DNA of 64,000 nt from Rhodosorus marinus CCMP1338 (GCA_029953675.1 JAMWBK010000008.1:1674001-1738000); one strand, 5' to 3'. Positions 23,975 through 52,640 are shown, counted from the stretch's first letter. Notes: generated by a model from the sequence alone, not told the origin. A program made the numbers and translations.

Positions 23975-24150
23975 CTAACAACCGCGAGAAGGGAGAACTA
24001 CACTCGACGCCAAGGAACGAGCCTCGAGGATAAGGGCCGCTAATCTCCGCCACAGGGCTAGACAAAGCAGAGATTGGAAACGCGTCAAGCGATCAAGTTG
24101 TTCCCCAAAGTAACTCACGCAACCAGATAACTTCTGCAACCGTCCATGAC
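23975..24150 (-). mobile_element. Divergent CRE-like 3' fragment (possible fourth family)
   Basis: YFGEQLDRLTRFQSLLCLALWRRLAALILEAR parallels family A FRERPDRLSSLFTRLSFLLWRLNAALMLEAR. Confidence 0.45.
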
Positions 24151-35357: not shown

Positions 35358-36774
35358 AAAAAGAACCCTAGATTTTGATCACAAGCAACCGCTCCGTAAC
35401 GCATAACATTCAATAGCTGCGATCTTAAGTGTCCTTCTTGCTTATCGCATATACAGGACTTCGGAGGGGTCATCCAGACTCTGAGATTGATGTCACAAAG
35501 CATCGGCATTGCGGGGCATAAGAACTCTCCAACCCCATTCTTAGGTACACATGTCTTGAAGCTACCAAATAATGAAGCTGCTGGTCATGTGGCTCGAACA
35601 GCCAGTCCAGTGGGCCAGTTCCGAGAGCAAATCCCCCGCGGCTAAGGAATACGAAGAGCACAAAGAACTCGTCTCGAAAATAAGGACGGTTGAACCCCGC
35701 CACTGGGTTAACTCAAGAAGACACTGAAACGAGACCAACCCTATATTCGATCCCCAAAGTACTCACGCTACCAGAGGACACGAGAAAACTCCCTTCGGCA
35801 TGCGCTTGTTCTACTCCTACTTGGAGTCCTTGCCACCTTTGAACGCGGACGTCTCAGCCTTGCAAGCAAGTTTAACCTTCCAGCAATATCCGGTTGAACT
35901 AAATTATGCTCGGGCTGTGCCAGAATCTATTGAGGTACAACACTTATTCTAGGCTCGGCAGTATTGCACATCCCGATGAAGGGTATAAATCTGACAAAGT
36001 AGGTGTTTCGCCTGTCATGTCTCTTGTTGCTTTATCTTAGAGTCTCCCTCGCTAGGATGACAAATGATCTTGGCTTATATAGGCAGCAGACTTGGTTAAC
36101 CCTAATGCTTCGAAGTCACTCCATGGTCTATATGTGTGTGTCCCAATTCAACAGATTAGTTTCCATTCTCGAGCCTGCACGCTCATTTGTCAGCCACCAA
36201 CAAGTTTCAGGGCCATGTGCTGGGATGGCAATTGTATCAGCAACTCTGTAAAGTGTTCATGGTGAAGGGAGTCGCTTCGACTGTACACGTTTGCTAACAA
36301 TAAATACGATGGAATCGCCGATGCTTTCGAGGTTATCTTGAAGCAAGAGAAGAAACAAGTAAGACAAAAGAACCAGAGGTCTGAACGGAAAGTTAGTTTT
36401 GGGATAAACTACCTAATTGGGGAGTAATTAGGAGGAAGGAAGTAAGCCTCGCATTCTGGAATAATCGAGGCAGTCCCAGGTAGACACCTGGGATGTATAA
36501 TCTTCAACACGTGCTTGCCAGCCTGTCGAGTCTAGAAGTAATCATGATTCATTACATGATATTGGTATTTAGTCGGGAGGAGAAGTAATGATGATACATG
36601 ATATGCGAACCATGCCATGAAGTAATCATGATTCAATACCTGGACTGAAGATGATTGATTACTTGACTAACGATGATTGAATATGGGACGATTTATCGGT
36701 CCTGACTTATCGGACGTGAAATCGGACTTTCTTTTTTTCCGGTAACGTTTATCGGACGGCACATGACAACAATA
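35358..36774 (+). mobile_element. Partial hAT-like copy H3 (internal part, right end, empty LTR target site)
   Basis: 35358-35830 matches H1 48468-48945. Contains GCCAGCCTGTCGAGTCTAGAAG-TAATCATGATTC uninterrupted. Right TIR ATGACAACAATA at 36763-36774. Confidence 0.7.
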
Positions 36775-36974
36775 GTTTACCGAACCCGAATACGAAAGAA
36801 AACATAGTTATCGTCCGATGAATGCTCCGATAACCGATTGCGGCCAATATTTTTCAATGAATTTTTCATCTTTTTCGTGCTGGTTGATTGACTTGACTAA
36901 GGTTTGATCACACTACGCGAGGTTATTAATACCTTTTTCTGTGGGATCACAACGGTAGCTTTGGTAGCTCAAGC

Positions 36975-37355
36975 TGAATGAGTTTGTTTAATCGGACGCT
37001 GAAAGAAAAAAACCCGGAGGGGAAAAAAAAGACGAAGCGCGGCGAAGATCGCGCGCCTCTAACATCAAAGCGGCGTTCATACGCCACAGCAAGAAACTTA
37101 AACGGTTGACACATCCCAGCGCACAAGTTGGGATGGATTGGCTAGGGAAGACTGGCTTGGTTGGCAGGGTTGACAGACGGTCAGGGCGTTCGCGGAACAA
37201 TTCCCGAAGTCAACGAGAACCAACGGAATCCAAAACCGAAAGCACTCAATGACCAGAGGTACCAGGCGATGAGCTAGGGCCGAAGCACGAATTCTCGCTT
37301 CTCAGGGTAGTTCGCCTCTGAATACCTGGGAAGGAAAAGGCCCCCTGCATATTTC
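36975..37355 (-). mobile_element. CRE-like family A 3' fragment cut by hAT H2, containing a ~30-bp family C tail at ~37292-37323
   Basis: Family A terminus at ~36980; TTCTCGCTTCTCAGGGTAGTTCGCCTCTGAATA inserted in the opposite orientation. Confidence 0.72.
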
Positions 37356-37626
37356 AGACAGCTAGGGTTGTCATCCGTCAGGCTACGTTTATCGGAATGT
37401 CCCATAACTTTTGAAGTGGATAGACTATTGCAAAACAGTACAGAAAGGGGATGTTCAATAGAAACTCTTCGACAAAAGAGGTCAGATAAATCGTCCGATA
37501 TTCAATCAACGTTAGTCTAGTAATCAATCATCTCCGATCCAAGTATTGAATCATGATTACTTTTGGGTTGACGAGCTCTCGCTCGAATATCATGAATCAT
37601 GATTATTTCTCGAATTGCGTAGCTCC

Positions 37627-37693
37627 ATTTTAGAACTCTTCGGGGGAGGTTCTCACACTCCTTATGACACTCTTCGGGGGAGGTTCTCACACT
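37627..37693 (-). mobile_element. Tandem ~30-bp mini solo-LTR remnants of LTR family 1
   Basis: Minus strand TGTGAGAACCTCCCCCGAAGAGTTCTAAAA equals LTR1 start fused to LTR1 end (AAAGAGTTCTAACA), followed by TGGAG. A second unit ends GTGTCA. Confidence 0.7.
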
Positions 37694-37698
37694 CCCCA

Positions 37699-39477
37699 TG
37701 ACACGTTCTCCATTAACGCGTATCGGTGATCCAAGACAAGTTTAAATTCTCTTTTTGTTTTTATCTTTTATCTATCTTGGATAGATAAAGGTCAAGGACC
37801 CTCCTCTAGCTCTAAGACGGAAGGTCGTAGCTTCCGTATTTATAGGCTTCCGGCTCATGTCCTGGGTTTGCTGGACTACTATTTTTAGATCTAGATTTAT
37901 CTATTATTAGCCTTGTTTTGGGCTACACTCCTGATGGCTGACTCGTTCGGTCAGGACGTAACAACTCCTCCCCACTGAAAGAAAGAACTATCCGGCGGAA
38001 GAAGAAGCTGCCTCGTGGAGGTTTGTATAATACCGGATTTGCTTCTTGGTATTCTGGTTCTGCGGTAGTTGATGGTAGGGTAACCATCTCAAATCGTCCG
38101 TTGTCTCGCCTTCAAAGTAAACGAAGTATTCATTCAGGTTCTTTTCATCTCGACGATGTCCCAAAACTGACTTCAACTCGCGCTGTGGTATGCCTCGTTG
38201 TAATGCAGGAACTACATGCGAGCCTTCAGGTTCCGATCCATTGAACTTCCGTAATAGCGACATGAAAAACATCATGTAGTTGAGAATCTCCCTGGAGCTC
38301 CAGCTTATATGCTACGTTACAAATTTTTCGTAGAATTTTAAACGGTCCGACATATCTGGGCCGAAAAAGTTTTGAATCTGGGAGTTGAAGATTCCGTGTT
38401 GACAAGAGCACATGTTCGCCTGGTTCAAAGTGGAGGTATCTTATGCCTCGATCATAGTAGAAGCGTTGGCGTTCTTGGGCATATCGTAGGTTGGCGCGGG
38501 CGAGGTCTCGTTGGTCCTTTTAGCGTTGTGGCAGGACCGTGGCGGCTTCAGGTATTGGTAGTGAACGGTCCCTGTCATCTGGTACTTTAAGGTCGGGAGG
38601 TAGTGTCGGGTTCTTTCCATATGTCAACTCGAAAGGAGAAAACTGCGTCGCTTCCGAGATCTGACGATTGTACACCAGCTCTGTAATCCACAGACAGACG
38701 GACAGACAGAGCGAATCAATCAGACGCTGGAGACGTACCTGAGGTGTAATTCATCTGCGACGAATTGGGCAGAAGGCCTACCGATTGCAGAGCTGGTGTA
38801 CAATCGTCAGATCTCGGAAGCGACGCAGTTTTCCTCTTTCGAGTTGACTTATGGAAAGAACCCGACACTACCTCCCGACCCTAAAGAACCAGATGACCGA
38901 GACCGTTCACTACCAATACCTGAAGCCGCCACGGTCCTGCTACAACGCCAAAAGGACCAACGAGACCTAGCCCGCGCCAACCTACGATATGCCCAAGAAC
39001 GCCAACGCTTCTACTATGATCGAAGCAAAAGATACCTCCGTGTGATGAGCAAGGCGTCGCGTCGCCCGTCGTAGGCTTTTCAGCTGCGGAGCCTGAATCT
39101 TGATGAGTGATGTCATCTTCTAGTTTTCAGAATTTTTTTTTTTTTTTTGGTTGTCAGGTTTCCAGGTTTTCAGGTTCTGGGCTCATTCATGTTCCTCAAT
39201 CGCAACTCATGCGAGGAGACCACTTGACACGTTCTCCATTAACGGGTATCGGTGATCCAAAATAATTAATAAATTCCTCTTTTTTTATCTTTTATCTATC
39301 TTGGATACCCTCCTCTAGCTCTAATCCTAAGACGGAAGGTCGTAGCTTCCGTATTTATAGGCTTCCGGTTCATGTCCTGGGTTTGCTAGACTACTAGTTT
39401 TAGATCTAGACTTATCTATTATTAGCCTTGTTTTGGGCTACACTCCTGATGCTGACTCGTTCGGTTAGGACGTAACA
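37699..39477 (-). mobile_element. Deleted Ty3/Gypsy (chromodomain) LTR retrotransposon, LTR family 2
   Basis: LTRs 37699-37963 and 39225-39477. PBS TGGTCTCCTCGC (39222-39211), PPT GGGGAGGAG, flanks CCCCA/CTCCA. Integrase C-terminus (RPRYVGPFKIL) and chromodomain (VLGHRR..EYFVYFEG...WLP). Confidence 0.9.
38432..39039. repeat. Fold-back inverted repeat, ~257-bp arms and ~94-nt spacer, Gypsy integrase-derived
   Basis: 38432-38688 is the reverse complement of 38783-39039. The spacer is plus-strand integrase core (QTDGQTERINQTLETYLRC). Confidence 0.92.
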
Positions 39478-40084
39478 CTCCACTTCTGGACTAGACAGGC
39501 TGGCGAGCGTTGGTTGAAGCAGGCGGTTTAAGGTGGCATGGACTTGGAGTAGAACGAGCATATTCCGAATGGAGTTTTCTCGTGTCCTCTGGTAGCGTGA
39601 GTACTTTGGGGATCGAATATAGGGTTGGTCGCGTTTCAGTGTCTTCTTGAGTTAACCCAGCGGCGGAGTTCAACCGCCCTTTATTCTCGAGGCGAGTTCT
39701 TTGTGCCGTTCATATTCCTTAGCCCCCGGGGGAGTTACCCTCGGAGCAAGGCGACTAGACTGGTTCTTCGAGTCACATGGCCAGTAGGTTCAGTAGTTTG
39801 GTAACCATGAGTTACTTCAAGTTATGTGTATTCTTGTGCCCGTAATGGGTTGTTTTTGACATCAAACCCAGAGTGTGCATGATCCCTCCGAAATCCTGAA
39901 TATGCGAGGTGCAACAAGTATAACTCAGTCTTATATGAGCCTTGAGGCTTGCTTTATTAGGAACATAGTATGCTAGTCAATAGATACGCCAGAGTTCTCA
40001 GGAGGATCTTCGAACCAATTTTAACATATCTCTCATGCTCGTGGAGGGGTCAATACTACTCAAGAACCCGGTCGTGTCTTCCTT

Positions 40085-40690
40085 TCATGATGGAGAGCTC
40101 TTCCGAAAGCAGATGATCAGAGTGATCTCCATCTCCGTACTGGCCGCCGGGGGTGATCCGAAGAGATGAGCGCCTGCTGAATTGCCAATGTGTTCCGTGT
40201 AATATTCTTCTTCATCTGCGAGTTCTGAGTCCGACAACGAGTGGGGAACCTCCTCTCCATCGGAAACGTTTGGATCATCCACGGCGCACAGCTCTTCCTC
40301 GATTCGACTTGACCCTTCGCGCTGCGGCTCTGACTTTTCCCTCTCCCACGCTTGGACGTCGGGGTCGGAAAGTGATCCTTCGTCGCCAAGCAAGTTTTTC
40401 AAACAGCTGAAAAATCCGCCGATCCCGATTGCGATTCGTCGGTTAATATGTGCGATAAAACAGTTTGATTGCTTCAACCTTTTTCAGCTTTGCAAGGTCG
40501 AGCCTCTTTCTGATTTGCGTCTTCGTGTTTTTCGCAGATGAAAACGGCTACGTGAGGGCTGTATCCGAGAACAAATCGAGCAACTTGGCTCAACTCTTTG
40601 CATCTCTGCGTTCCGCCAATACTCGAAGGGGTTTATTTCGCTGTTTTGCGAAAGGCCCAAAGCCGAACAGCGAAAAACCTCGAACCGAAA
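40085..40690 (-). pseudogene. Degenerate hAT transposase C-terminal dimerisation domain and acidic tail
   Basis: Across frameshifts: NPFEYWRN..ELSQVARFVLG..KTQIRKRLDLAKLKKVEAIKLFY, then an acidic stretch (SDSELADEEEYY). Lies inside H2. Confidence 0.6.
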
Positions 40691-40929
40691 AAGATGCATT
40701 GAAAAATATCGGATGCAATCGGTCGTTATCGGACCATTTATCGGACGAAGCGTATTTTCTCTTTTGCATTCAAGTCCGATAGACTCATATCGGACAGGTG
40801 GTCAACGGAATATATGGTCTATTATTACGAAATACAGATTCATTAAACTTTTCTCGGATCGTCCGATATTTATTGGACACAATCGGAAGGAGATGACAAC
40901 CCTTCTCAGCGAAGTCATTCACTCAAGCA

Positions 40930-41184
40930 ATGCTTTGACAGCCTGTCGAGATCAGAACTAATCATGATTCAATATCTGGGTCGGAGATGATTGATTAATA
41001 GACTAACGTTGATTGAATATCGGACGATTTATCTGACCTGGTTATTGAAGGCAATCGCACCTATTTTTAGAAGAATTTCAATTCATTACCGGGTTAAGTT
41101 TATACTTTTTACAATAGTCTATTCACGACGAAATTTTATCCGTCTGTCCGATAAACGTTGTCGGACGGCCCATGACAACAACTA
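40930..41184 (+). mobile_element. Lone hAT-like right end H4 (second empty target site)
   Basis: CAGCCTGTCGAGATCAGAAC-TAATCATGATTC, subterminal repeats, ending ATGACAACAACTA. Confidence 0.65.
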
Positions 41185-42517
41185 AAACTAAATGAGACAA
41201 GGAATGAACCATGGCTATGCCTATACCCGATATTAATTAGACTATGTTCAGGCTAAACTGAGGAGTTCGAGGTCGTAAACAATTGCCCTCACAAGCATCT
41301 ATCGGATATTCTTCTATATGAAATCGATTTTATCATTCGAATATATACAGTATAGCCTAGAAATATTTTTTTTCCTAGCATACACATATTTCAACAAATA
41401 ATATAGATTGTCCTTAATACTTTAAAAACGGTAATATTTTAAGGTTAATATCTTCATTAAATCGTTTTAACCGTGGAATGCGTATGCACACATCCAGGTT
41501 TTACGCATAGACGTTCTTTACTTTAGATAGTTTCTCCCTAAATATGGTGGATCTAGAAATAAGCGTAGCAATAATTGAAAATCATAATTAACAGTAGGCC
41601 GAGCTGCCCACTGCCAGACTACGCATCCTATTACATCCTAACAGCTAGGGAGTTTTCACAGTGCGAGGAGGGATTCCCTTTTTATACGCACATTCCGTCT
41701 TCGATTTAGATAGACTGGACATTTATTTAGAATATCTAGATTCGTACTCTAGATATAGGTGAAAGTTGTAGTTTTATTTGAACTAACTGGCAAACCCGCG
41801 GGCTTATCCCTACTCAGAATCCTAAGGTCGCCGAGGATTTTTTTTTAGGGTCCCGGCAAGTTAGGACCAAGTTAGACTCGTATATTCTTTGATTTAAAAA
41901 TACACTCATAAATATAAGCAAAATAGTAATAAAAATGTGCAGTAACTTCTAATTTTGCTCCCGGCAGAGCCCAGTTTTTCCTCCAAATAGAATTTGAGGG
42001 AATGAGGGCGAATGATTGATAAGAGCGGAAGGGTTTTCGGGGCTGATGGAAAAGCTAAGGCTTATGATCTTCGACGGTGTGGAGGATGGTGGGAGACACC
42101 TTTAATCTTTATGTGTTTGTCTTGTCTTTTGTCTCGGACCGAGTGAAAAGATCGATTGGTTTCTTACTCCCGGGGAATCAGGAGGACTTGGTCATAAGGG
42201 ACTGAGGTGAGAGTCCTGGACGAGGTCCGTTGGACGAGCGTGTCGGACAAGGCTGTTCTTCGGTGCGTGCCTCTTTGTTGTTTTTTTTTGGACCCTTCCT
42301 TCTAAGGGTTTGGAAGGGTAGCTTGGCGATAGAACAAGAATCTGGTTTGATCTGAATCGTCGGTCTTGAAGTGCGTCCTTTGAATGGGCATTGTTTTAGG
42401 TTCGTACTTGTAGATAGTCTTACTGTTGCGCGCGAGCGCGCGTGTGTGTGTCTGTGTTGGAGAGAGAGAGATAGGGAGAGATTCTTTTTGTTTGCTTCGC
42501 ATTGAGATCTGAAAGAG

Positions 42518-43865
42518 ATGATGAAATCGCAGAAGTTGGGTGGTTTTGGCCGCTTCAGAGCTCGAAGGGTTCAAGCCTGGACCGTGCTCGCCGCTTTTTT
42601 TGTCGGAGTACTTTTCGGTGGTCTGATAATAGAGCTGATATTCGTAGCGCAGCCCCCTGAAGGGAAGCCAACAACGGCCGTGGCTTCGTTTCGGGATGTG
42701 TTCGACAAAATATATATCATGAATATGGACCAGTAAGTTCACAGCGGCACTCCCAGCAGAGCATGTTCTTCTAGTGCGAATTCGAATTTCTGACCATAAA
42801 GCTCATCCTTTTTGTATTTGTGCGCGCCTCTCTCCGTGTCTCTGTCCGCAACCAGATGTGTGGAGAGGTGGGAGATGACAAAGCAGTACGCCAATGCGAT
42901 TGGAATCGACGTGCACAGATGGTCAGCATACCAAGCGAAGAAGGAGGAGATTATGAATCCCCCAGACGGAATCTCAACTCGAAACCTTCAACACGACTAT
43001 ATTGCGGCTGGTGCGCTTGGAAATTGCGTCTCACACCGCCGGATCTGGAAGGACGTCATAGACAAAGGATACCGACGCGTCCTAGTCTTGGAGGACGACG
43101 TTTTTCTCACGAATCAGACTTGGCTCATGCTTCCAGACCTTTTCAGACTTGTCGACGAAGCTCAGGAGGTAATAGACCCGACCCCCCCCCCCTACCCGTG
43201 TACTTTCCTGTTGTCTGGCGTGCCAAATACGTGAAGCTCGTGGTTAGTACAACCAAGGTCTGATTTCGTCATGATGCGTTTCTTCCTCGTCACTCCCAGA
43301 TCCACAAGAAAGCATGGCATTACATTTTCTTCAGGAGAAATGCAATCCGGAACGTGCGGGATGAGAAGGTATGGAGCATGAGCCCATCTGGACATCCGGT
43401 TACAATAGCAGGTCCGAGCTGGGGCACAGCAGCATACGCTGTGAGTCAAGCGGGAGCGCAATTTTTGCACAATGAGTATAGTGAGTTTAAATGGCCTGTT
43501 GACGTCCAGATGGCGGAGCTGGAAAAGCGCAATCGGGATTTCGTGTCGCTGAGCGCCTGTTACAATGACGAGTTTAAGAACATGTGTCCTGAGAACGTGA
43601 TTGAATATACGAAGGAAGAAAAAGGCAGATGCAACGGGAGTGGTACAGTTTGTTACCCGACGCTTTCAGAGCTTGAAATTGTTATCGAGGTTGTCCTTTG
43701 TCCGCTGAACGACGTGGAAACTATGTTTTTTTTGTGTTTTGTCCTCTGTTCCCGGACTTTGCGCTCACTGCAGGTACACAGCAGGGAGGCCGAATATCAA
43801 AGGAAGAACTGAACCGGAAATACAGGGAGATGGATGGAGTCGAAGGTGACCAAAGCGATGAATAA
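42518..43865 (+). CDS. GT25-family glycosyltransferase paralog; exons 42518-42732, 42856-43168, 43300-43642, 43774-43865
   Basis: TM helix, DKIYIMN, GALGNCVSHRRIW, VLVLEDD, WGTAAYAVS, PVDVQ. Three GT-AG introns at the same positions and phases as 11401-12784. Confidence 0.88.
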
Positions 43866-45062
43866 ACGATATTTGTGTAACAAAAGAGCGAGTGGGGCCC
43901 CTGATGAATGCGAAAAGACTAGCGTACGACTTCTAACACGGGTCCGGATATGACGGCTCAGATGATGAAGAAGGGCGCGTCTTGTGCGAGGGCCTTGTTC
44001 GCTTATAAACTGTGGATGTGGTGTTGGGAATTCCTCCCGGAGAGGACTTCAGTCCTAGAAGCTGTAGGGTTTTTCTAGTTTTTTTTGGTTGAGGCAATTT
44101 CCAGAATTTCACTGGTTGTTTGGAGTACTTTGTCTCGCCGTCGCAAGCGCCGTTGGCATTAGCCCGACCCGAACTCCGAATTTTTCTTGTTTAGTGTCAG
44201 GACGCGTAGCCGTGGGGCTTTTAAAACCGGAACATGCAGTGCCGGCATTGGCCCCGGGCGAAACCATTCAGTAGAGTACGTCAACCTCAGAGTTTTAGCA
44301 ACCTAAAAGGCCCCCACCGACCACCATTAGCACCACGCCCCAAGAGTGCAAATTTAGGAACCGGAAACCAACAAAAATTACGCGCGACTCGCACTCCAAA
44401 CTCAATTCTGTGTTCCTTCCAACAGGCAAAATGCCTCTGCGTGCCGATCAGATCTTTGACTGATCACGGCAAACCACCAAGGTTTTTCTTTTGGTTTACT
44501 GAAACGACATTTTCAGCGAATGTTTCAGAATTTTGGTTAAAATTCGGTTCCATTATGGTAGTCGAAGGTTTGCCACTTGGCCTCCACTTCTGGACGCGGA
44601 TGTGGAATTAGCGTAGTGGTTGGCTGCTACGGGTAGGAGGGAACGATGGGAGAAGTTTATACAGCTTGCTATCTCCACCTACTTACATCCAGTGCAATGA
44701 CTTAGCAGTTGTTCCAATGGAGAATAGTTCTACTTTGGGATTGGGTTGGAGGATTAGGAGACACAGCTCCGAAAACGTCGCACAGGGCCTAAAAATCTCA
44801 TCAGTTTTGTCCTAGAAAGCCATGTCCTCTTTCCCCGGGGGTTCAATTGTCATTAGTAACCCCAGACTAACGGATCATCGTCAATGCCTCCGGAAGACAA
44901 AGCCCCAAACAGGGGAGGCGGGGGTTCCTCCAAATGAACACAGTCAGTTATTCGGTCCGAATCCTCAATTCCATCATAGAATGCCTAGCGGGTTACCAAA
45001 TGCAAAATTCCATGGAAAACATGGACAATTATATAAAGTTATTTCAGCTCATTGAGAAAATT

Positions 45063-45990
45063 ACGTTATCACTTTAAATTATATTAATTCATAGCTGCGT
45101 CTATTTATTCCCAAAATAATAGGAGATATGCTCCAAATATTACTTTCAGACATTTTGCTGTTGCAATAAATGGTAGCAGATTATTCGATTTATGAAAGAA
45201 AAAGTTTCTCTTCGCGAAGTCTGGTGGTGTGTGTCAAGTCAGCCTTTTTCCTGAGGGGGTGGGAAGAAGCTCAGGCACATTGAAATACCTGGAAAAGAGC
45301 TGGACAGATTATTAGATCTTTTCGTCTAAGTAAAAGAAAAAGTTTCTCTTGACGAAGTCTCGCCGTGTGTCTAGTCAGCCTCTTTCCTGAGGGGGTGGGA
45401 AGAAGCTCAGGCACATCGAAATACCTGGAAAAGAGCTGGACAGACTATTGGATCTTTTCGTCCAAGTAACCCCCTCACGAAGAGTTGCTTGATAAGTCCA
45501 AAGAATTTTTTCCCAGCGCCTCCTTGACTTACTCCGTTGTCAGCCGGGCCGATAGTTGTCGTCCTATCCGGCTACAACAGTGCGCCAACACGTTATCACT
45601 TCAATTTATATTAATTCATAGCTGTGTCCATTAATTCCCGAAATAGTAGGAGAAATACTCCAAATATTACTTTCAGACATTTTGCTGTTGCGATAAATGG
45701 TACGCATATTATTCGATTTGTGAAAGAAAAAGTTTCTGATGACGAAGTCTCGTGGTTGTCTGTCTAGTCAGCCTTTTCCTGGGGAGGTGGGAAGAAGCTC
45801 ACGCACATCGAAATACTTGGAAAAGAGCTGGACAGATCGTTATCCCAGCAATGGGCTGTGAATACTAATCGCTATTGGATTTGTCGAAACAGCTCCTAGT
45901 TGATACACACTTATTCTAAATCATTTCAACGTGTTCACTGACTTCCTATTCAGTTCGTGTTTAGCTGCCTTTGACCTCAACTAAATAAAA
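45063..45990 (+). repeat. Locally duplicated AT-rich repeat, possibly Harbinger-derived
   Basis: 45063-45310 is repeated at 45592-45837, with a ~135-bp tandem unit at 45193-45470. Translation FAVAINGTHI resembles the Harbinger GAIDGTHI motif. Confidence 0.5.
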
Positions 45991-46520
45991 TTCGTTCAAC
46001 AAAGGACCTCTTAATCGAAAGAATGGCAATCGTTTCTGTTTGTTGACTGATCCGAGTTTCAATACCGTTGAAATTGGTTTGTCCTAGGTGCTGAAAAGCA
46101 AGAATTTTAACCAAAATCGGTTAAAGTTCTTGAGACGAGTGAGTTCTGAAGTGGACTGTATTGAAATTAACTCAAGATCTGCTGAAACAGAAGGCTTGTA
46201 CGCTGCAAGCTAGCTGTCCCTCACGCACACCCGTAAGTCCGGTTGTTTACTCCGCTAGCAAACCGATCTGTTTCAGAGGTTGGGTTTGGTTTCGTTTTGG
46301 TGGTGGTGGTGGTGAGGAAGTCGATAATATAAAGAAGCATTGATTGAATCAGCGCGGTTAACTGACATATCTTGTCTGTATGCTCTTCGTGGTTTGCTGT
46401 TGAAGGCTGTTTGTAGCGCCTACCGACGCGTTGGGAAGGGTCTTCTAGAGGAACCAAGGCAATCCATGGCTGCGGTGCTTCGAGTAGTGAAGAGTTGCCC
46501 ATCTAAGTGACTAGGTAACG

Positions 46521-47924
46521 ATGAAGAAGACTATGCTCAAGCTTAACGTTCTGCTCCTGGCAGGAACGCTTTCAATGATCTGCGCATTCACGGCCGAAAG
46601 CCTGCCTAGCCAGAGTCGGACTTCGGAACCAAGTGGGAAGAGCACTTGCCTGAGGGAAATTCTTCCGACTCAGTTCGTAAATTTCTTCCAGCGGGAGTGT
46701 TTCAGTCTGGTAAGCAGATCGGACAAGGTCAAGTATGCTCAGGTGTGCACAGGGACTCGTGTGAGACTCACACCGGATGCGGGGGAACCAAGTGTAAGGC
46801 TTAAGTTTAAGGCTAGAGGTGAAGGCGTTCGATTCAGGAAGGTTGCCGTCGGCGTCTACCAAAATTGCCACATAGTCCCAAACTCTTATGCTAAGTATTA
46901 CGTTAGAAAGCACATGAATAGCGAAGTGACAGTAATAGACATCCCCATAGACGATATCCCGGCGAGGAGCAACTGTTGTGACAGAAAGCTGTGCATGGTC
47001 GTTACGGCGGAAGTCTACGTAGAGCCGTCCGAACGAAAAGTCCAGCTTCGGGCGGGAGAAGAATGCTCATCCTACCCGTGGGGAGTTGGCAATGGTCGGG
47101 CATGTCGGTTCGGGATCAACTGTATCAACCGCATCGTCGGAACGCTAAACGATGATATTCTCTACGGGACCGACTATGTTGACTGGATATACGGCTACCT
47201 GGGAAATGACCTAATCAATGGGTATGGCGGCGACGATGTGATCCACGCGGATTATGGAGACGACGTCGTTCACGCCGGCAAAGGTAACGACAGAGTATAC
47301 CTTAGTGGTGGCACCGATTTTGCGCTCGGCGGCAAGGGAAACGATCTCATATTTGGCGGAGAGGGAGACGATTACATTCATGGACAGCGTGGGAACGACC
47401 GCGTCTACGCAGGTGAAGGGGACGACTTCATCCGCGGTGGTTTGGGAAAGAACGTTTTGGAGGGAGAGGAAGGTGGCGACGTTGTCGTCGGAGGCGTGTC
47501 TGCGGATGTTATCGTTGGCGGAGCAGGAGCAGATAGGCTCTACGGTGCCGCTGGGGGTGATATTATCTTGGGTGAGCTGGGCTCGGACTTGATTTACGGA
47601 GGCGCTGGAGCGGATGAAATACTCGGAGGGGAAGGTAATGACGAAATTTACGGCGGCCCGGGCAGCGATACCATTAGTGGTGGACCCGGGAACGATTCTC
47701 TTTTCGGTGGCGAAGGAGATGACGTCATCTTCGACAAAAAGGGTAACAGCTCCGTTTACGCATCGTACGGGGACGATACCATTACCACCGGGGATGGGAA
47801 CGACGACATCGACGCGGGACAAGGAGACGATGTGATTAATAGTGGACACGGGCTCGATAATGTCGATCCAGGACCAGGCAGAAATATTGTCAACGGAGAA
47901 GAAGTTGACATCCCTCCTTTCTGA
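46521..47924 (+). CDS. Secreted protein: signal peptide, Cys-rich domain, 28 contiguous RTX-type (GGxGxDxxx) nonapeptides
   Basis: Intronless 467-aa ORF; nonapeptides run in register from GTLNDDILY to PGPGRNIVN. Confidence 0.9.
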   Translation: MKKTMLKLNVLLLAGTLSMICAFTAESLPSQSRTSEPSGKSTCLREILPTQFVNFFQRECFSLVSRSDKVKYAQVCTGTRVRLTPDAGEPSVRLKFKARGEGVRFRKVAVGVYQNCHIVPNSYAKYYVRKHMNSEVTVIDIPIDDIPARSNCCDRKLCMVVTAEVYVEPSERKVQLRAGEECSSYPWGVGNGRACRFGINCINRIVGTLNDDILYGTDYVDWIYGYLGNDLINGYGGDDVIHADYGDDVVHAGKGNDRVYLSGGTDFALGGKGNDLIFGGEGDDYIHGQRGNDRVYAGEGDDFIRGGLGKNVLEGEEGGDVVVGGVSADVIVGGAGADRLYGAAGGDIILGELGSDLIYGGAGADEILGGEGNDEIYGGPGSDTISGGPGNDSLFGGEGDDVIFDKKGNSSVYASYGDDTITTGDGNDDIDAGQGDDVINSGHGLDNVDPGPGRNIVNGEEVDIPPF

Positions 47925-47972
47925 GGTGAGCAGCTCCAGTTGGAATAGGCTATTCTAGATGGTGGTTTTACT

Positions 47973-50900
47973 TAGGGTTGTCATCTCTGTCCGATAAAAA
48001 AACGTCCGATTGCGTCCGATAAATACCGGACGGTCTAATAAAAGTGTATCGGACCTGTATTACGTAACAATAGACATATATGCTGTTTACCCCCCATCCG
48101 ATACGAGTTTATCGGACCTGAATATAGAAGACAAAATGGGTTTCGTCCAAGAAATGGTCCGATAACGACCGGTTGCGTCCGATATTTTTCAATGCATCTT
48201 TTTCTGTGCATAGTGTCGTTCGCTGTGGGCTTTGGGACTTTTGCTTGGCTAACCACCCGCAAAAAAGCAACAGGCTATTGAGAACATATTGGGAAGTCCG
48301 AGTAGCCGTCGCGGAAGGAACAGGGCAAGGGGTAGAAAGAGGAGATAAGGCGGTGGCCAACTATCTTGGTATAGGGTGTGAGAATTCTGGGCGCATCTAT
48401 TGACTAGCAGGACTATGTTCTTAATAAAGCATGCCTCAAGCCTCATGTAAGAATGCTCACAGTGGAGGAACCCTAGATTTTGATCTCACAAACAACCGCT
48501 CCGTAACGCATAACATTCAATAGCTGCGATCTTATGTGTACTTGTTGCTTCTCGCATATACAGGACTTCGGAGGGGTCATCCAGACTCTGAGATTGATGT
48601 CACAAACATCGGCATTGCGGGGCACAAGAACTCTCCGACCTTATTCTTAGGTACACATGTCTTGAAGCAACTCATGGTTACCAAAATACTGAAGCTACTG
48701 GTCACGTGGCTCGAACAGCCAGTCCAGTCGGCTTGCTCCGAGAGCAAGTCCCCCGCGGGCTAGGGAATACGAACAGCACAAAGAGCTCGTCTCGAGAATA
48801 AGGACGGTTGAACTCCGCCACTGGGTCAACTCAAGAAGACACTGCAACGCGACCAACCATATACTCCATCCCCAAAGTACTCACGTACAAGAGGACACGA
48901 GAAAACTCCCTTCGGAATGCGCTTGTTCTACTCCAAGTCCTTGCCCCTTAACCGCAATCTTAAACCAATGCTTGCCAGCCTGTCGAGTCTAGAAGTAATC
49001 TGTGAGAACCTCCCCTGACAGCTGTGTAATCTGTCAATGTTTTAGAGTCGGGCACCTATTTTAGTGCAGGATGTCAATGTTTTAGTATCCACTGGTTTCT
49101 ACTTTACTGTCAGGTATGTTTTAGTTTACAGTAACCAAGACTATATAAGGCCTAGCTTTGCTAGAACTTGAGACCTAGAATTGAGTAAAGACAAGTTAGT
49201 TCAAAGAGTCCTAACAAAATGGTCTCATCGCCGGAGAAACGATCAAAAGGAAAGCAGAAGGCGACGGAGGAGGACCACGAGAAAGATGTCCGAATGGTAC
49301 TACGACAACTAGAGCAGAATCAACTAGTTGTCAAACATTCGAAGCGCCAGTGCGGAGTACGCCAAGTATGCTACGTAGGTCAAATCTTGGCGGGAGGCAC
49401 TCGTCTCCCTGATCCTAAGAAGGAGCAGGCAATCCAGAATTGGAAGGCTCCCACAAACGTAAAAATAGTACGTGCGTTCATGGGCTTCGCAAATTTTCTA
49501 CGGCGGTTTGTTCCTCGCTTTGCACAGGTGGCTGCACCACTGCACGCACTCACCAACAAGGATCAGCAGTGGAAGTGGCACCGGGAGGAGCAACACGCCT
49601 TCAACGAAGTAAAACGGGCCATATCGACCCGACGCTCCCTTTCATTGTTCAAGTGGATGCAAGTGACGCGGGTGTCGGCTGTGTTCTCTTTCAAACGCGG
49701 CAAGACCAGGAGGTGCCAGTGGCCTATATGTCGCGCTCTTTCAACGCAACGGAAATGCGCTACAGTACCTACGAGAAAGAACTGTATGCCATCGTACTGG
49801 CAGTACAACAATGGTCCGTATACCTCGACGGGCAGCAGTTCAAGGTGCGTACGGATCATAACCCCTTGCGCTTTCTGCAGACACAGAAGACGTTGACGCG
49901 ACGACAAGCGCGTTATGTCAACGTACTATTACCCTATTCCTTTACGATCGAGTATGTACGGGGCAGTCTCAATATCGCGGACGCCCTCAGCCGCGACGCA
50001 CTACGGGCTATCCGCGTCACATCAGATGCAGATTGGACTCAAGACTACGAAGCCGACGCAGAGTTCTCTACTCAATTCCGCGGCCCGGTGGGCAGCTTGA
50101 AGGTTTTTAAGGGAAGGGGGGGCTGCTGTTCTTACATGCAAGGCTTTATGTACCCGGCAACCGCGTCACCGAGGTCATTGGTACGCACCATAAATCAGTG
50201 ACGGCTGGTCATTTCGGGGCACGGGCAACGTATCGACTATTACGCCGACGATACTACTGGCCAAGCATGCGCCAGGATGTGCTCGCTCGGGTACGACAGA
50301 GCGAGGTATGTGCCCGAGAACAACCGTTGAGACGCCACCAGGGAGAGCTTCAACCGCTCCCAATCCCAGAGAACCGAGCCGTGGACTGGACCATGGATTT
50401 CATCACGGGTTCCCTCGGTGAACGGTTATGATGCAATAATGTTTGTAGTCGACCATCTCACGAAGTTTGCCGTTTTCGTCCCGACTTCGAAAACGGTGAC
50501 GGCAGAAGAGGGGGCAGATCTTGTTGGCCCACAAATCATCTCCTTGTTCGCGTTATCCCGGAGCTTCGTCACAGATCGTGATAAGGTCTTCACAGCGACT
50601 TTCTGGCGACACCTTCTGCGATTGATGGGGGTTCAGCAGCTGCTCTCTACCCCGTACCACCCCGAAACGGATGGAAAGACGGAACGGGTGAAATCAGACC
50701 CTACAAATTATGCTGAGATGCTGTTGTACCAGTCCAACATGGATGCAGTGTCTACCCCTACTTCAGCTGGCCTACAACAACCATGCGTCGGCCAGTACGG
50801 GATATACACCGTATTTTCTGTTAACCGGAGGGCATCCACGTTTGAACTTGGACGCTCTCAACTCAACCCCGGCGATTACCAGCCTTGCCGACGCGGCGAC

Positions 50901-52015
50901 TGCTTTCGTGAAACGACAACAACAAATTCTTGCAGACGCACGCAAGTCCATGGCCCTGGAGCAGGAGTTATAAACTGATCACGCGAATTCACGGCGTCAC
51001 ACCAGGGTGTTCAACATTGGTGACAAGGTTTATTTGTCCACGCGCAACCTCCCTCTGGAAGGCCGTACCCGGTTTCAATCTCGCTGGTTGGGCCCCTTTC
51101 CAGTCATCGAAAAACATTCGGACGTCGCGTACACGCTACAGTTACCTGATGAAATGCGGGTACACCCGACATTCCATGTTTCCTTACTGAAGAGCGCACC
51201 GCCTGGGACAACTGAAACCCGACATATTCCTGTGCGAACCAATCTACACCCGACGCAACCCGTGCTATCGGTATTGAGCGTGCGTACGGATGATGAAGGC
51301 ACACGCCAGTTTCTATGCTACCGCGAACATGAATCGTGGACTGATGCTATTTGGCTCCCTGAACGCGACTATCCTACGGACACTCTATCACGACAACGCC
51401 TACGACACTACCTGAACTACCGAAAAATGCTCGATGCTCTTCCTGCAACGATTTGAGTTTGTGCCCAAACTCGGCGGGAGGAAGGTGAGAACCTCCCCCT
51501 GACAGCTGTGTAATCTGCCAATGTTTTAGAGTCAGGCACCTATTTTAGTGTAGGACGTCAATGTTTTAGTATCCACTGGTTTCTACTTTACTGTTAGGTA
51601 TGTTTTAGTTTACAGTACCCAAGACTATATAAGGCCTAGCTTTGCTAGATCTTGAGACCTAGAATTGAGTAAAGGCAAGTTGGTTCAAAGAGTTCTAACA
51701 TAATGATGATTCATTACATCACAGTGTCAGCGAATCAGACGAAGAAGTAATGATGAATCATGATATGCGAACTGTATCAAGAAGTAATCATGATTCAATA
51801 TCTGAACTGAAGATGATTGATTGCTAGATTAACGTTGATTGAATACAGGACGATTTATCGGTCATGTTTATGAGAAGGGCAGCGGACCCGTTTTTTCGAA
51901 GAATTGCAATCAGACGCCCCTTCGTTTTATACTGTTTTGCAATTGTCTATCTATCCACTTCGAAAGATATCGGTACCGTCCAATAAACGTTGTCGGACGG
52001 CGCATGACAACACTA
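47973..52015 (+). mobile_element. Non-autonomous hAT-like DNA transposon copy H1 (hosts Gypsy 49001-51700)
   Basis: TIRs TAGGGTTGTCAT (47973) and ATGACAACACTA (52004-52015); subterminal TCCGAT/ATCGGA repeats; internal homology to H2 and H3. No clean 8-bp TSD seen. Confidence 0.75.
49001..51700 (+). mobile_element. Deleted Ty3/Gypsy (chromodomain) LTR retrotransposon, LTR family 1
   Basis: LTRs 49001-49216 and 51484-51700 (about a dozen differences). TSD TAATC/TAATG, PBS TGGTCTCATCGC at 49220, PPT GGCGGGAGGAAG. Frameshifted RT C-terminus, RNase H (DASD, YEKEL, TDH), integrase (GHFG..YYWP, GPF) and chromodomain-like tail; gag/PR absent. Confidence 0.93.
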
Positions 52016-52019: not shown

Positions 52020-52640
52020 ACTATGCCACCTGCTCGCCGGCTGCCCCGCTGTGAAAGGCGCCCGAGCCCGACGACATACGCGATCTTGAACCTGTTATAC
52101 CGCGAACTTCGACCTATCGTACGTCAAGCCGGTCTTGAAATTGAACGTGAGAAGCCCCGGGCTGTTGCAGGCTACCAGAATGATGAACACCGCGTGGCTG
52201 CCGTGTGGTCACCTGTGGCGATAGCCTCCGTACTACGTATGTTGATCTTGCTGTTCCTAGTCCTCAGGCTGGTCGCTATTTGCCGGCTGCGGGAGAGCGC
52301 CGTGGATTTGCTGCTGCCAATATGAGACGTCTCAACGAGTTGAAATATGCGGTAGCACTGTCTTCCCCATGCGTTCGTGCTTCGGCTCTAGCTCATCGCC
52401 TGGTACCTCTGGTCATTGAGTGCTTTGGGTTTATAGATTCCGTTGGTTCTCGTTGGCTTCGGAATTGTTCCGCGAACGCCCTGACCGTCTGTCCTCGTTG
52501 TTTACCCGTTTTAAGTTTCTTGCTATGGCGTGTGAACGCTGCTTTGATTTATGAGGCCACAATCTTCGCCGCACTTAGTCGTTTTTTTCCCCCCGAGGTT
52601 TCTTCTCTCAGGCCCGGATTAAACCAATTCATTCATTTTA
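52020..52640 (+). mobile_element. CRE-like family A CCHC-RLE-3' end
   Basis: HLLAGC..TTYVDLAVP..HRLVPLVIECFG; terminus GGATTAAACCAATTCATTCATTT. Confidence 0.82.

What the first reader, a model, noticed from the sequence alone, without database searches (positions are those of the whole stretch)
37620..51720. Independent Gypsy insertions at the identical position of different hAT copies: candidate site-specific LTR targeting of another transposon
H1 reads AACCAATGCTTGCCAGCCTGTCGAGTCTAGAAG-TAATC-[LTR1]-TAATG. H2 (minus strand) reads AACCAACGCTCGCCAGCCTGTCTAGTCCAGAAG-TGGAG-[LTR2]-TGGGGAG-[mini LTR1 x2]-TGGAG. The two unrelated LTR sequences have different TSDs, yet both start exactly 5 nt after the same motif and in the same orientation relative to the host. 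Empty sites survive at ~36520-36550 and ~40940-40975. Three events at one coordinate suggest a sequence- or protein-guided integration preference, a safe haven inside a DNA transposon's subterminal region, next to AATCATGATT palindromes.
Basis: partly seen in the sequence, partly recalled or inferred. Interest (0 to 1): 0.76.

Follow-up and report, generated by a model that had tools for sequence, protein, structure and literature searches.

The report
Retrotransposons hitting one transposon site
In a red alga, two different retrovirus-like mobile elements inserted independently at exactly the same spot in separate copies of another mobile element. This hints at aimed integration, but three events do not prove it.

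Summary
The window comes from the red alga Rhodosorus marinus (GCA_029953675.1).

Two degenerate Ty3/Gypsy elements are present. LTR1 lies at 49001-51700 on the + strand and LTR2 at 37699-39477 on the - strand. A 30-nt remnant made of the two LTR1 ends also lies beside LTR2. All three sit directly after GCCAGCCTGTC[G/T]AGTC[T/C]AGAAG in two diverged copies (H1, H2) of a ~1.34-kb non-autonomous, hAT-like element. All three have the host's orientation and carry 5-bp duplications, TAATC in H1 and TGGAG in H2.

The insertions are independent. H1's closest relative, H3, is empty at the site, the duplications differ, and the LTR pairs are younger than the host copies.

Three corrections apply:
- The "two minis" are one insertion plus a 34-bp tandem duplication.
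- H2 lacks 24 nt to the right of the site, so "same position" holds only when measured from the left flank.
- The hAT assignment is weakly supported.

Chance identity of site and orientation is about 4x10^-4 per pair. The best reading is a position-specific integration preference set from the left side, possibly through a bound factor. The LTR1 integrase C-terminus folds like the Ty3 SH3-plus-vestigial-chromodomain "ruler".

The genome-wide flank test could not be run. About 90 kb was sampled and held no further copies.

The parts
47973..49000 (+). H1 host element, left part. It has the terminal inverted repeat TAGGGTTGTCAT, CGGAC/TCCGATA subterminal repeats and an internal block from 48378. 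It ends with the motif GCCAGCCTGTCGAGTCTAGAAG (48974-48995) and the left target duplication TAATC (48996-49000).
   Evidence: H1 without the insert is 1338 bp.
49001..49216 (+). LTR1 5' LTR (TGTGAGAACC...AGTCCTAACA).
   Evidence: The boundaries are confirmed by the related transcript L003.
49217..51483 (+). LTR1 internal region. It holds the primer-binding site TGGTCTCATCGCC (49220-49232), a gag start fused to the RT C-terminus, RNase H, integrase (zinc finger, core, SH3), a chromodomain-fold C-terminus, and the polypurine tract GGCGGGAGGAAGG. Several frameshifts and stops are present, and gag, protease and the RT core are deleted.
51484..51700 (+). LTR1 3' LTR. K2P distance to the 5' LTR is 0.053.
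51701..52015 (+). Right target duplication TAATG (51701-51705), followed by the H1 right arm. The arm holds three GAAG|TAAT(C/G)ATGAT units and ends in ...CATGACAACACTA.
39483..40904 (-). H2 host element, left part. It carries the terminal repeat, a weak hAT dimerisation-domain remnant at 40446-40642 and an internal block from 40000. It ends with the motif at 39504-39483.
39478..39482 (-). Left copy of the 5-bp duplication TGGAG in H2.
   Evidence: The TGG is host sequence, because it aligns with H3 TGGTA and H1 TGTCA.
37699..39477 (-). LTR2 element. The 5' LTR is 39225-39477 and the primer-binding site AGTGGTCTCCTCGCA is at 39210-39224. The interior is only the integrase C-terminal region, as an inverted duplication (38619-39068 on +, 37991-38741 on -). 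The polypurine tract GGGGAGGAGT precedes the 3' LTR at 37699-37963. K2P between the LTRs is 0.068.
37628..37698 (-). TGGGGAG, a 27-nt mini, TAAGGAG, then a 30-nt mini LTR1 (TGTGAGAACCTCCCCCGAAGAGTTCTAAAA). This is one internally deleted LTR1-family solo LTR, doubled by a 34-bp tandem duplication spanning 37635-37704.
37363..37627 (-). Right copy of TGGAG (37623-37627) and the H2 right arm, which ends in the terminal repeat (TAGGGTTGTCAT read on the + strand at 37363).
35363..36774 (+). H3, a 5'-truncated host copy with an EMPTY site: motif at 36517-36538 and a single TAATC at 36539-36543. It carries an unrelated 660-bp insertion at 35841-36508, 44 nt to the left of the site.
40925..41184 (+). 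H4, the right-hand fragment of a further host copy. The diverged motif GACAGCCTGTCGAGATCAGAAC (40937-40958) is followed by TAATC. The site is empty and the repeat units have collapsed to one. Its left edge, about 30 nt before the site, is a junction with the LINE-like F repeat into which H2 is inserted.

Best explanation
This is a nest of mobile elements in Rhodosorus marinus.

Shown: a ~1.34-kb non-autonomous, terminal-inverted-repeat element (H, hAT-like) is present in at least four copies. Two of them were hit by integrase-mediated insertions of Ty3/Gypsy elements, each making a 5-bp duplication. The insertions came from two distantly related families. LTR1 hit H1. In H2, an LTR1-family copy (now a 30-nt remnant) and LTR2 inserted one after the other. 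All three events used the same phosphodiester position, immediately 3' of ...GCCAGCCTGTC(G/T)AGTC(T/C)AGAAG, and all three lie in the host's orientation. The events are independent of each other.

Inferred: the position is not random. Something on the 5' (left) side of the site sets it, because that is the only sequence the two targets share. The duplicated 5-mers and the right-hand sequences differ.

The most likely mechanism is tethering of the intasome to a DNA-bound factor, or to the arrested fork or bent DNA that such a factor creates, at the subterminal region of H. The integrase C-terminal SH3 plus vestigial chromodomain would act as a ruler, as in Ty3/TFIIIB or Tf1/Sap1. Both families carry a homologous C-terminal module.

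Whether this is a genome-wide property of the families is not shown.
For: - Junctions and duplications are exact.
- Motif and LTR-end counts are far above the shuffled expectation.
- The two elements are the only Gypsy pol remnants in the 64 kb. nhmmer finds no further LTR1 or LTR2 copies in about 90 kb (window, L002, L004). So 3 of 3 observed events are at this site, although H sequence covers only about 8% of the window.
- Independence: H3 is empty and is H1's nearest relative (K2P H1-H3 0.10, H1-H2 0.145, H2-H3 0.19). LTR pair distances are 0.053 and 0.068. The duplications differ (TAATC versus TGGAG). H1 and H2 sit in different surroundings: H1 lies beside a gene 3' end, and H2 lies inside an F repeat.
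- Chance of the same site and orientation in a 1338-bp host is 3.7x10^-4 per pair.
- The two elements in H2 reuse the same 5-nt target, with a target-derived spacer between them. This matches what is described for double insertion (PMC5932611).
- The LTR1 integrase C-terminus is modelled at pLDDT 87 as SH3 plus a three-strand/helix chromodomain fold. The best PDB match is the Ty3 integrase in the TFIIIB-bound intasome (7q5b), followed by Chp1, CBX and CDY chromodomains.
- In Ty3, a vestigial chromodomain fixes the integration position with extreme precision (PMC8632968).
- The LTR2 C-terminus is homologous to that of LTR1 (29-33% identity).
Against: - There are only two loci and three events, and the two events in H2 may not be independent of each other.
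- H2 lacks 24 nt immediately to the right of the site. The left edge of that gap coincides with the insertion point and is unexplained.
- The spacer between LTR2 and the mini is 7 nt (TGGGGAG or TAAGGAG), not the expected 5 nt.
- Other kinds of junction lie 30-44 nt to the left of the site in H3 and H4. This fits a general hot or fragile zone rather than a Gypsy-specific aim.
- No factor, no binding data and no genome-wide flank statistics are available.
- The Pfam chromo domain is not detected and the aromatic cage is degenerate.
- In a genome-wide scan, one chance coincidence among many nested insertions is not impossible.
Confidence: 0.5

Rival explanations
1. The site lies in a general hot or fragile zone. 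The ~50 nt before the palindromic repeat units of H would be break-prone or nucleosome-free and would collect insertions and rearrangements of any kind. On this view the Gypsy integrases have no aim of their own and simply use the most accessible bond.
For: All four H copies that include this region carry a junction within 44 nt of the site:
- a 660-bp, mostly unique insertion in H3 at -44;
- the 5' junction of the LINE-like F repeat in H4 at about -30;
- a 24-nt deletion in H2 starting exactly at the site;
- a copy-number-variable 37-47-bp repeat just to the right.
Against: - A general zone does not predict single-nucleotide identity and identical orientation for three integrase events.
- Single-strand folding of the site region is no more stable than shuffles in H3 (z = 0.05 to 0.7).
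- Other breakpoints in H copies lie far from the zone, at H positions of about 133, 230 and 495.
Confidence: 0.2
2. Regional preference plus coincidence. Chromovirus-type integrases favour silent, TE-rich chromatin, so nesting inside H copies is expected. The exact match of position would then be a chance hit picked out after the fact.
For: - Most relatives of the LTR1 pol carry a Pfam chromodomain, and the LTR1 C-terminus has that fold.
- The region is a dense TE nest.
- If a genome holds n LTR insertions in H copies, the number of same-site, same-orientation pairs expected by chance is about n(n-1)/2 divided by 2676. That is about 0.5 for n = 50.
Against: - Three events, not two, share the bond and the orientation.
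- The two loci lie in one 64-kb window, and no other copy of either family occurs in about 90 kb.
- The probability is 3.7x10^-4 per pair.
Confidence: 0.15
3. Homing to an LTR edge. The internal block of H (48378-49000) would be an old solo LTR ('LTR0') of the LTR1 lineage that H carried along when it multiplied. New elements of the lineage would then integrate at the 3' edge of that LTR, either because it mimics a viral DNA end or because it carries the tether's binding site, as Tf LTRs carry Sap1 sites.
For: - The block starts with TGTGAGAA, the first 8 nt of LTR1, exactly where H1-H2 homology begins (alignment A5).
- It ends GAGTCTAGAAG, which can be compared with the LTR1 end GAGTCCTAACA.
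- A fragment of the block occurs alone at 24011-24128.
- Tf LTRs contain Sap1 sites (PMC5371812).
Against: - The block has no internal similarity to LTR1 or LTR2 beyond chance.
- It has no TG...CA end and no duplication around it.
- The left flanks of the block are not homologous between H1 and H2.
Confidence: 0.1
4. Integrase-independent insertion. Single-stranded primer-binding-site and polypurine-tract tails of the cDNA would anneal to homologous host sequence, as in the Rad52-dependent pathway described for Tf1.
For: - Purine runs (AGAAG, GGAG) precede every LTR start.
- TGG follows the mini.
- The pathway is documented for a Ty3/Gypsy element and produces tandem arrangements (PMC11042837).
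Against: - Clean 5-bp duplications flank the LTR1 element and the whole H2 block, which is the mark of integrase.
- Local alignment of the host right flanks to the LTR1, LTR2 and L003 primer-binding-site and leader regions is no better than shuffles (121-486 of 500 shuffles score at least as well).
Confidence: 0.03
5. One ancestral insertion was inherited by H1 and H2 and later remodelled or replaced.
For: An LTR1-family remnant is present in H2 as well as in H1.
Against: - H3, the nearest relative of H1, has an intact empty site with one TAATC and no footprint.
- The duplications differ (TAATC versus TGGAG).
- LTR pairs are younger than the host divergence.
- H1 and H2 have unrelated surroundings.
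Confidence: 0.02

Closest known systems
Ty3 of Saccharomyces cerevisiae (integration at Pol III start sites through TFIIIB)
   Same: - Both are Ty3/Gypsy elements that make 5-bp duplications.
- Both show nucleotide-precise positioning next to a fixed landmark.
- The LTR1 integrase SH3-plus-chromodomain model is closest in the PDB to the Ty3 integrase of the TFIIIB-bound intasome.
- In Ty3, a vestigial, histone-independent chromodomain acts as the ruler (PMC8632968).
   Different: - The landmark here is a motif inside a DNA transposon, not a Pol III promoter. No tRNA gene lies in the window.
- No tethering factor is known.
- Only three events have been seen.
- All three events share one orientation.
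Tf1 of Schizosaccharomyces pombe (Sap1-guided and arrested-fork-guided, single-nucleotide-specific integration)
   Same: - Tf1 is a chromodomain-bearing Ty3/Gypsy element.
- Its insertions lie at fixed positions beside the binding motif of a sequence-specific DNA-binding protein.
- Competence depends on the orientation of the barrier.
- The LTRs themselves carry the binding site, which favours clustering (PMC5371812; Hickey et al. 2015 is cited there).
   Different: - Tf1 targets Pol II promoters.
- Here the target is the subterminal region of another transposon.
- The existence of a bound factor or a fork barrier is pure inference.
Chromoviruses with heterochromatin-reading chromodomains (e.g. 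MAGGY; Gao et al. 2008, cited)
   Same: - A C-terminal chromodomain fold follows the integrase SH3 domain.
- The elements nest in TE-rich DNA.
   Different: - Histone-mark reading gives regional, not single-nucleotide, targeting.
- The module here is not detected by Pfam, and two of the three aromatic-cage positions are lost.
Double insertion at one target site (R1 in rDNA, P-element dimers; McGurk and Barbash 2018)
   Same: - Two elements lie head-to-tail with a target-derived spacer between them.
- The whole block is flanked by the same duplication (TGGAG), as in H2.
   Different: - The two partners belong to different families.
- The spacer is 7 nt, not 5 nt.
- The second element is reduced to 30 nt.
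Sequence-specific Drosophila Gypsy-group elements (gypsy, ZAM, Tirant: fixed short target motifs; from my own knowledge)
   Same: These are Ty3/Gypsy elements with reproducible targets at nucleotide resolution.
   Different: There the duplicated target itself is the conserved motif. Here the duplicated 5-mers are unrelated (TAATC, TGGAG) and the conserved sequence lies entirely to one side.

Membership tests
Ty3/Gypsy LTR retrotransposon (both inserts) | Direct long terminal repeats with TG...CA ends around an internal region | tested here: met
   LTR1: 216 and 217 bp, TGTGAG...TAACA. LTR2: 253 and 265 bp, TGTTAC...GTGTCA.
Ty3/Gypsy LTR retrotransposon (both inserts) | Primer-binding site after the 5' LTR and polypurine tract before the 3' LTR | tested here: met
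   LTR1: TGGTCTCATCGCC and GGCGGGAGGAAGG. LTR2: TGGTCTCCTCGCA and GGGGAGGAGT. The primer tRNA was not identified, and no tRNA gene lies in the window.
Ty3/Gypsy LTR retrotransposon (both inserts) | pol order RT/RNase H before integrase, with Gypsy-type RNase H and Tf2-type SH3 | tested here: met
   LTR1: RT_RNaseH 7.6e-36, rve 6.6e-05 (23.5 bits, below Pfam's 32.6-bit cut-off), SH3_Tf2-1 1.2e-16, in that order. LTR2 keeps only the integrase C-terminal part (SH3_Tf2-1 3.6e-14). The 587 homologues are all Gypsy polyproteins.
Ty3/Gypsy LTR retrotransposon (both inserts) | 4-6-bp target-site duplication | tested here: met
   TAATC/TAATG around LTR1. TGGAG/TGGAG around the H2 block. The inner junction of LTR2 is 7 nt.
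Chromovirus (Gypsy with an integrase chromodomain) | Chromodomain at the integrase C-terminus | tested here: inconclusive
   Pfam chromo is not detected, even at E = 10. The region aligns to the chromodomains of relatives, but the first and third cage aromatics are lost. The AlphaFold model has the fold, and Foldseek hits many chromodomains at TM 0.7-0.86.
hAT superfamily (host element H) | Short terminal inverted repeats beginning YARNG | tested here: met
   TAGGGTTGTCAT and TAGTGTTGTCAT in H1. TAGGG and a mutated AAGGG in H2.
hAT superfamily (host element H) | 8-bp target-site duplication | tested here: inconclusive
   H1: GTTTTACT on the left. The 8 nt directly on the right (CTATACTA) match poorly, but ATTTTACT (7/8) follows the F repeat that sits 10 nt from the H1 end. 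H2: 3/8.
hAT superfamily (host element H) | hAT transposase or its C-terminal dimerisation domain | tested here: inconclusive
   No transposase lies in the window. A frameshifted remnant in H2 (40446-40642) gives Dimer_Tnp_hAT at E = 0.036 and 14.3 bits, against a cut-off of 21.4. The stronger hit is void, because the query contained three residues I had typed in.
Site-directed (tethered) LTR retrotransposons of the Ty3/Tf1/DGLT-A type | Most copies of the family sit at the same kind of target | not testable with these tools
   The R. marinus genome cannot be searched by DNA here. Three of three events in about 90 kb are at the site. Two metagenome scans found nothing.
Site-directed (tethered) LTR retrotransposons of the Ty3/Tf1/DGLT-A type | Fixed distance from a recognisable landmark | tested here: met
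   In all three events the 5-nt duplication starts immediately after ...AGTC(T/C)AGAAG. n = 3.
Site-directed (tethered) LTR retrotransposons of the Ty3/Tf1/DGLT-A type | Integrase module that contacts a DNA-bound host factor | not testable with these tools
   Only a fold resemblance to the Ty3 CTD-chromodomain pair is available.
Double insertion at one target | A copy of the target duplication between the two elements | tested here: inconclusive
   The spacer is TGGGGAG or TAAGGAG (7 nt), against the outer TGGAG.

The most novel reading that the evidence does not exclude
Two red-algal Gypsy families with a vestigial integrase chromodomain are tethered to a factor bound at the subterminal region of a hAT-like DNA transposon. 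They integrate at one fixed nucleotide and in one orientation. A multicopy DNA transposon would thus serve as a dedicated safe haven, a target class not described for LTR retrotransposons. The repeated hits at the H site would be the footprint of that system.
Probability: 0.3. Interest if true: 0.75.

Novelty: new variant of a known kind. Interest (0 to 1): 0.55.

Why it matters
Nucleotide-precise targeting by LTR retrotransposons is understood in only a few yeast and amoeba systems (Ty1, Ty3, Ty5, Tf1, DGLT-A). In all of them the target is a host gene promoter or host chromatin.

A system in a red alga that aims at a fixed site inside another transposon would have several consequences:
- It would add an independent case of a "safe haven" strategy.
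- It would show one mobile element using another as its landing pad.
- It would give a second natural example of a vestigial chromodomain acting as a positional ruler.

The claim is cheap to test, because the genome is public. If the test fails, the locus is an ordinary TE nest with a striking coincidence.

Tried and rejected
1. Genome-wide flank collection was not possible.
- R. marinus TEs are not annotated as genes. The best protein hit to the LTR1 pol is a 72%-identical JGI transcript.
- A paralogue route gave one extra locus, L002, with no H, LTR1 or LTR2 copies.
- The window could be extended by only 3.7 kb on the right, with nothing new in it. On the left the look-up failed.
- Two metagenome DNA scans, one with the host motif and one with the LTR1 core, gave 0 hits.

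2. Insertion driven by primer-binding-site or polypurine-tract homology looked plausible by eye. It is not better than shuffles.

3. A cruciform or hairpin at the site was tested. There is no excess stability in the empty H3 site.

4. An ancestral insertion is contradicted by the empty H3 site and by the distances.

5. H1 and H2 as segmental duplicates: both have an F repeat on their right, but at different F positions (about 14 versus about 370). H1's left flank is a gene end, whereas H2 lies inside an F copy.

6. The mini as part of another repeat family: only a 9-nt chance match was found.

7. The internal block of H as a relative of LTR1 or LTR2: there is no significant internal similarity. 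It is kept only as a lead.

8. The Pfam hATC hit is withdrawn, because the query was edited by hand. The honest query is sub-threshold.

Full report
**Provenance.** The RTX-repeat gene at 46521-47924 is found, residue for residue, on contig JAMWBK010000008.1 of GCA_029953675.1. The data-availability section of PMC10250338 assigns that assembly to the red alga Rhodosorus marinus. Window base 1 corresponds to about position 1,674,001 of that contig. The sequence is therefore eukaryotic nuclear DNA carrying ordinary genes: GT25, an RTX-like protein, an alpha/beta hydrolase, and VWA, Hint, trypsin and beta-helix proteins. A dense nest of transposable elements lies between them.

**The observation.**
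- In H1 (+ strand) the motif GCCAGCCTGTCGAGTCTAGAAG (48974-48995) is followed by TAATC. Then comes an LTR element at 49001-51700, then TAATG, then ATGATTCATTAC.
- In H2 (- strand) the motif, with two mismatches, lies at 39504-39483. It is followed by TGGAG, an LTR element (39477-37699), TGGGGAG, a 27-nt mini, TAAGGAG, a 30-nt mini, TGGAG and CTACGC.
- The motif occurs three times in the window where shuffles give none. The LTR1 start occurs four times where shuffles give 0.15.
- The third motif copy, in H3 (36517-36538), is followed by a single TAATC and by the same sequence that follows the H1 insert. It is an intact empty site.
- A fourth, diverged copy (H4, 40937-40963) is also empty.

**The inserts.** Both are Ty3/Gypsy elements and both are dead.
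- LTR1 has LTRs of 216 and 217 bp, a primer-binding site and a polypurine tract. Its pol remnant runs from the RT C-terminus through RNase H and integrase, with several frameshifts and stops. Nearly all of gag, and protease and the RT core, are missing.
- LTR2 has LTRs of 253 and 265 bp. Its interior consists only of the integrase C-terminal region, present as an inverted duplication.
- Their LTRs are unrelated in sequence. Their integrase C-termini are 29-33% identical and their primer-binding sites are almost the same. They are distant relatives, not unrelated elements.
- A related, transcribed family exists in a JGI data set (L003, 71% nucleotide identity). It confirms the LTR1 boundaries.
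- These two elements are the only Gypsy pol remnants in the 64 kb.

**The minis.** The 30-nt unit is the first 16 nt of LTR1 joined to its last 13 nt. It is best read as an internally deleted solo LTR. Tandem Repeats Finder reports a 34-bp repeat with 2.1 copies at 37635-37704, and it includes the last six bases of the LTR2 3' LTR. The second mini is therefore a local duplication made after LTR2 arrived. H2 records two insertion events and H1 records one.

**The host element.**
- H1 without its insert is 1338 bp. It has inverted ends TAGGGTTGTCAT and TAGTGTTGTCAT and many CGGAC/TCCGATA subterminal repeats. Near its right end lie three 37-47-bp units, each beginning TAAT(C/G)ATGAT just after GAAG.
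- The window encodes no transposase.
- Three things speak for the hAT superfamily. The terminal repeat is of YARNG type. The 8-mer GTTTTACT before H1 reappears as ATTTTACT just beyond a LINE-like repeat (F) that sits 10 nt from the H1 end. A frameshifted remnant in H2 scores 14.3 bits against the hAT dimerisation domain, below the 21.4-bit cut-off.
- I withdraw the stronger score, because that query contained three residues I had filled in by hand. 'hAT-like' is the most that can be said.
- The nest is layered. A further H copy (fragments at 36775-36866 and 40925-41184) contains an F repeat. That F repeat contains H2, and H2 contains LTR2 and the mini.

**Independence of the events.**
- In the ~440 nt shared by three copies, the K2P distances are H1-H3 0.10, H1-H2 0.145 and H2-H3 0.19. 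The filled H1 is thus closest to the empty H3.
- LTR retrotransposons do not excise precisely, and H3 carries no footprint. The H1 insertion therefore happened after H1 and H3 separated. It cannot be the same event as anything in H2.
- The duplicated 5-mers are unrelated (TAATC versus TGGAG).
- The LTR pairs (0.053 and 0.068) are younger than the host-copy divergences.
- H1 and H2 lie in different surroundings.

**Is it the same position?** Measured from the left, yes. Thirty-three nucleotides align with four mismatches, and the duplication starts immediately after AGAAG in both copies.

Measured from the right, no. H2 lacks the 24 nt TAATCATGATTCATTACAT.A.AG that H1 and H3 have (alignment A1). 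The TGG of the H2 target aligns with TGGTA in H3 and TGTCA in H1, so TGGAG is host sequence and a genuine duplication.

Two things follow. The AATCATGATT palindrome cannot be the cue, because it is absent at the H2 site. Whatever fixes the position must lie to the left, because that is all the two targets share.

One point remains unexplained. The left edge of the 24-nt gap coincides exactly with the insertion point.

**Chance.**
- For two independent insertions that land in H copies, identity of site and orientation has probability 1/(2x1338) = 3.7x10^-4.
- H sequence covers about 8% of the window, yet both Gypsy elements are in it.
- No further copy of either family occurs in about 90 kb of R. 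marinus DNA that I could read (window, L002 and the 3.7-kb extension in L004).
- Against this, the finding was picked out of a scan. If a genome holds some fifty LTR insertions in H copies, it would be expected to contain about half a chance pair.
- The third event at the same bond, and the two loci lying 10 kb apart, make pure chance unlikely but do not exclude it.

**Mechanisms tested.**
- A documented integrase-independent pathway inserts Tf1 cDNA where the host resembles its primer-binding site or polypurine tract (PMC11042837). Purine runs do precede every LTR here. However, clean 5-bp duplications flank the LTR1 element and the whole H2 block. The host right flanks also align to the primer-binding-site and leader regions no better than shuffles do. 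I reject this pathway.
- Single-strand folding of the empty site shows no unusual stability.
- The two elements in H2 reused the same 5-nt target and left a target-derived spacer, as described for double insertion (PMC5932611). The spacer is 7 nt rather than 5 nt.
- Other junctions cluster nearby: a 660-bp, mostly unique insertion 44 nt to the left in H3 and the F-repeat junction about 30 nt to the left in H4. A general hot or fragile zone is therefore a serious rival, or a contributing cause.

**The integrase C-terminus.**
- Pfam finds no chromodomain in either family.
- The region aligns to the chromodomains of relatives, but two of the three cage aromatics are lost.
- An AlphaFold model built on 26 sequences (pLDDT 87) shows an SH3-like barrel followed by three strands and a helix.
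- Its best PDB match is the Ty3 integrase in the TFIIIB-bound intasome. Many histone-binding chromodomains follow, at TM 0.7-0.86.
- In Ty3, exactly such a vestigial chromodomain contacts Brf1 and the target DNA. There it acts as a ruler that fixes the integration position (PMC8632968).
- In Tf1, the DNA-binding protein Sap1 and the fork barrier it forms guide integration to single nucleotides, with dependence on barrier orientation (PMC5371812).
- These are the closest known systems in how they work. Membership in a 'site-directed' class cannot be claimed, because its defining feature, that most copies of the family sit at the target, could not be tested.

**A lead not followed to the end.** The internal block of H starts with TGTGAGAA, the first eight bases of LTR1, exactly where H1-H2 homology begins. 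It ends GAGTCTAGAAG, which resembles the LTR1 end GAGTCCTAACA. It may be an old solo LTR of the same lineage that H carried along. In that case the 'site' would be the 3' edge of that LTR. There is no internal similarity, no TG...CA end and no duplication around it to support this.

**Verdict.**
- Independent, integrase-mediated insertions of two Gypsy families at one bond of two copies of a hAT-like element are shown.
- A position-specific preference set from the left flank is the best explanation (about 0.5). A dedicated targeting system for this transposon is possible (about 0.3).
- The decisive test is a flank census of both families and a filled/empty census of H in the public genome. It is simple but could not be run with the tools at hand.

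Noticed in passing
window 5716-6599, 10289-10668, 18227-18332, 21732-21894, 24699-24920, 34639-34930, 36946-37362 with 40905-~40930, 52026-52635, 60328-61991; L002 4689-4910, 5174-5380, 18342-18510, 20460-21068; L004 51-532, 1708-1864: An abundant repeat family (F). Copies share one 3' end (...CCGATTAAAC.AA.TCATTCA) and have variable 5' truncation, as in LINE-like retroelements. Some copies keep an ORF with the motif ...FVPLIIECFG.TDSVGSRWLR.... One copy sits 10 nt from the H1 right end, and another contains H2.
   Followed up: partly
window 47965-47972 and 52635-52642: GTTTTACT before H1 reappears as ATTTTACT just after the F repeat that abuts H1. This is probably an 8-bp hAT-type duplication split by the later F insertion.
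   Followed up: partly
window 35841-36508: A 660-bp, mostly unique insertion in the host copy H3, 44 nt to the left of the LTR site. It has no terminal repeats or duplication. One 110-bp piece matches 58990-59099.
   Followed up: partly
window 48378-49000 (H1), 39483-40000 (H2), 24011-24128: The internal block of the host element begins with the first 8 nt of LTR1 (TGTGAGAA), exactly at the H1/H2 homology boundary. It ends in a sequence that resembles the LTR1 3' end. It may be an older solo LTR carried by the host element. A fragment of the block occurs alone at 24011-24128.
   Followed up: partly
window 37635-37704: A 34-bp tandem duplication (2.1 copies, 94% match) spans the end of the LTR2 3' LTR, the spacer and the mini LTR1.
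   Followed up: yes
window 36539-36640, 51701-51800, 37520-37622, 40959-40975: The right arm of the host element holds a copy-number-variable array of 37-47-bp units, each starting TAAT(C/G)ATGAT. H1 and H3 have three units, H2 has two plus a 22-nt stub, and H4 has one.
   Followed up: partly
window 40446-40642 (- strand): A frameshifted remnant resembling the hAT C-terminal dimerisation domain (NPFEYW...LSQVARFVLG...PFSSAKN...KRLDLAKLKKVEAIKLF). It scores 14.3 bits, below Pfam's cut-off.
   Followed up: yes
window 46521-47924; L002 1578-3245: A secreted protein in a red alga with 12 RTX (HemolysinCabind) nonapeptide repeats, and a 526-aa paralogue on another contig. Its Cys-rich N-terminal part resembles the neighbouring 246-aa gene (55355-56095). 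The repeats may have a bacterial origin.
   Followed up: no
window 37991-39068: The interior of the LTR2 element is an inverted duplication of the integrase C-terminal coding region (38619-39068 on +, 37991-38741 on -).
   Followed up: partly
L003 (JGI 3300017118, Ga0186320_103804) 1-2188: A transcript-like contig of an LTR1-related family (integrase 72% identical). Its LTR is followed directly by the primer-binding site, which indicates a tandem or circular-type assembly. The family appears to be expressed.
   Followed up: partly
window 463-5436 and 7506-8420: A large VWA-domain ORF with long internal tandem duplications (units of about 820-1220 bp at 93-99% identity) and a 12-nt periodic Thr/Pro/Ser-coding tract. 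A diverged inverted paralogue lies next to it.
   Followed up: no
window 45063-45837 and 24220-24520: A further repeat family with 138-bp tandem units. One of its ends (GTAACCCCCTCACGAAGAGTTGC) is also found at 24471-24520. It is unrelated to the finding.
   Followed up: no
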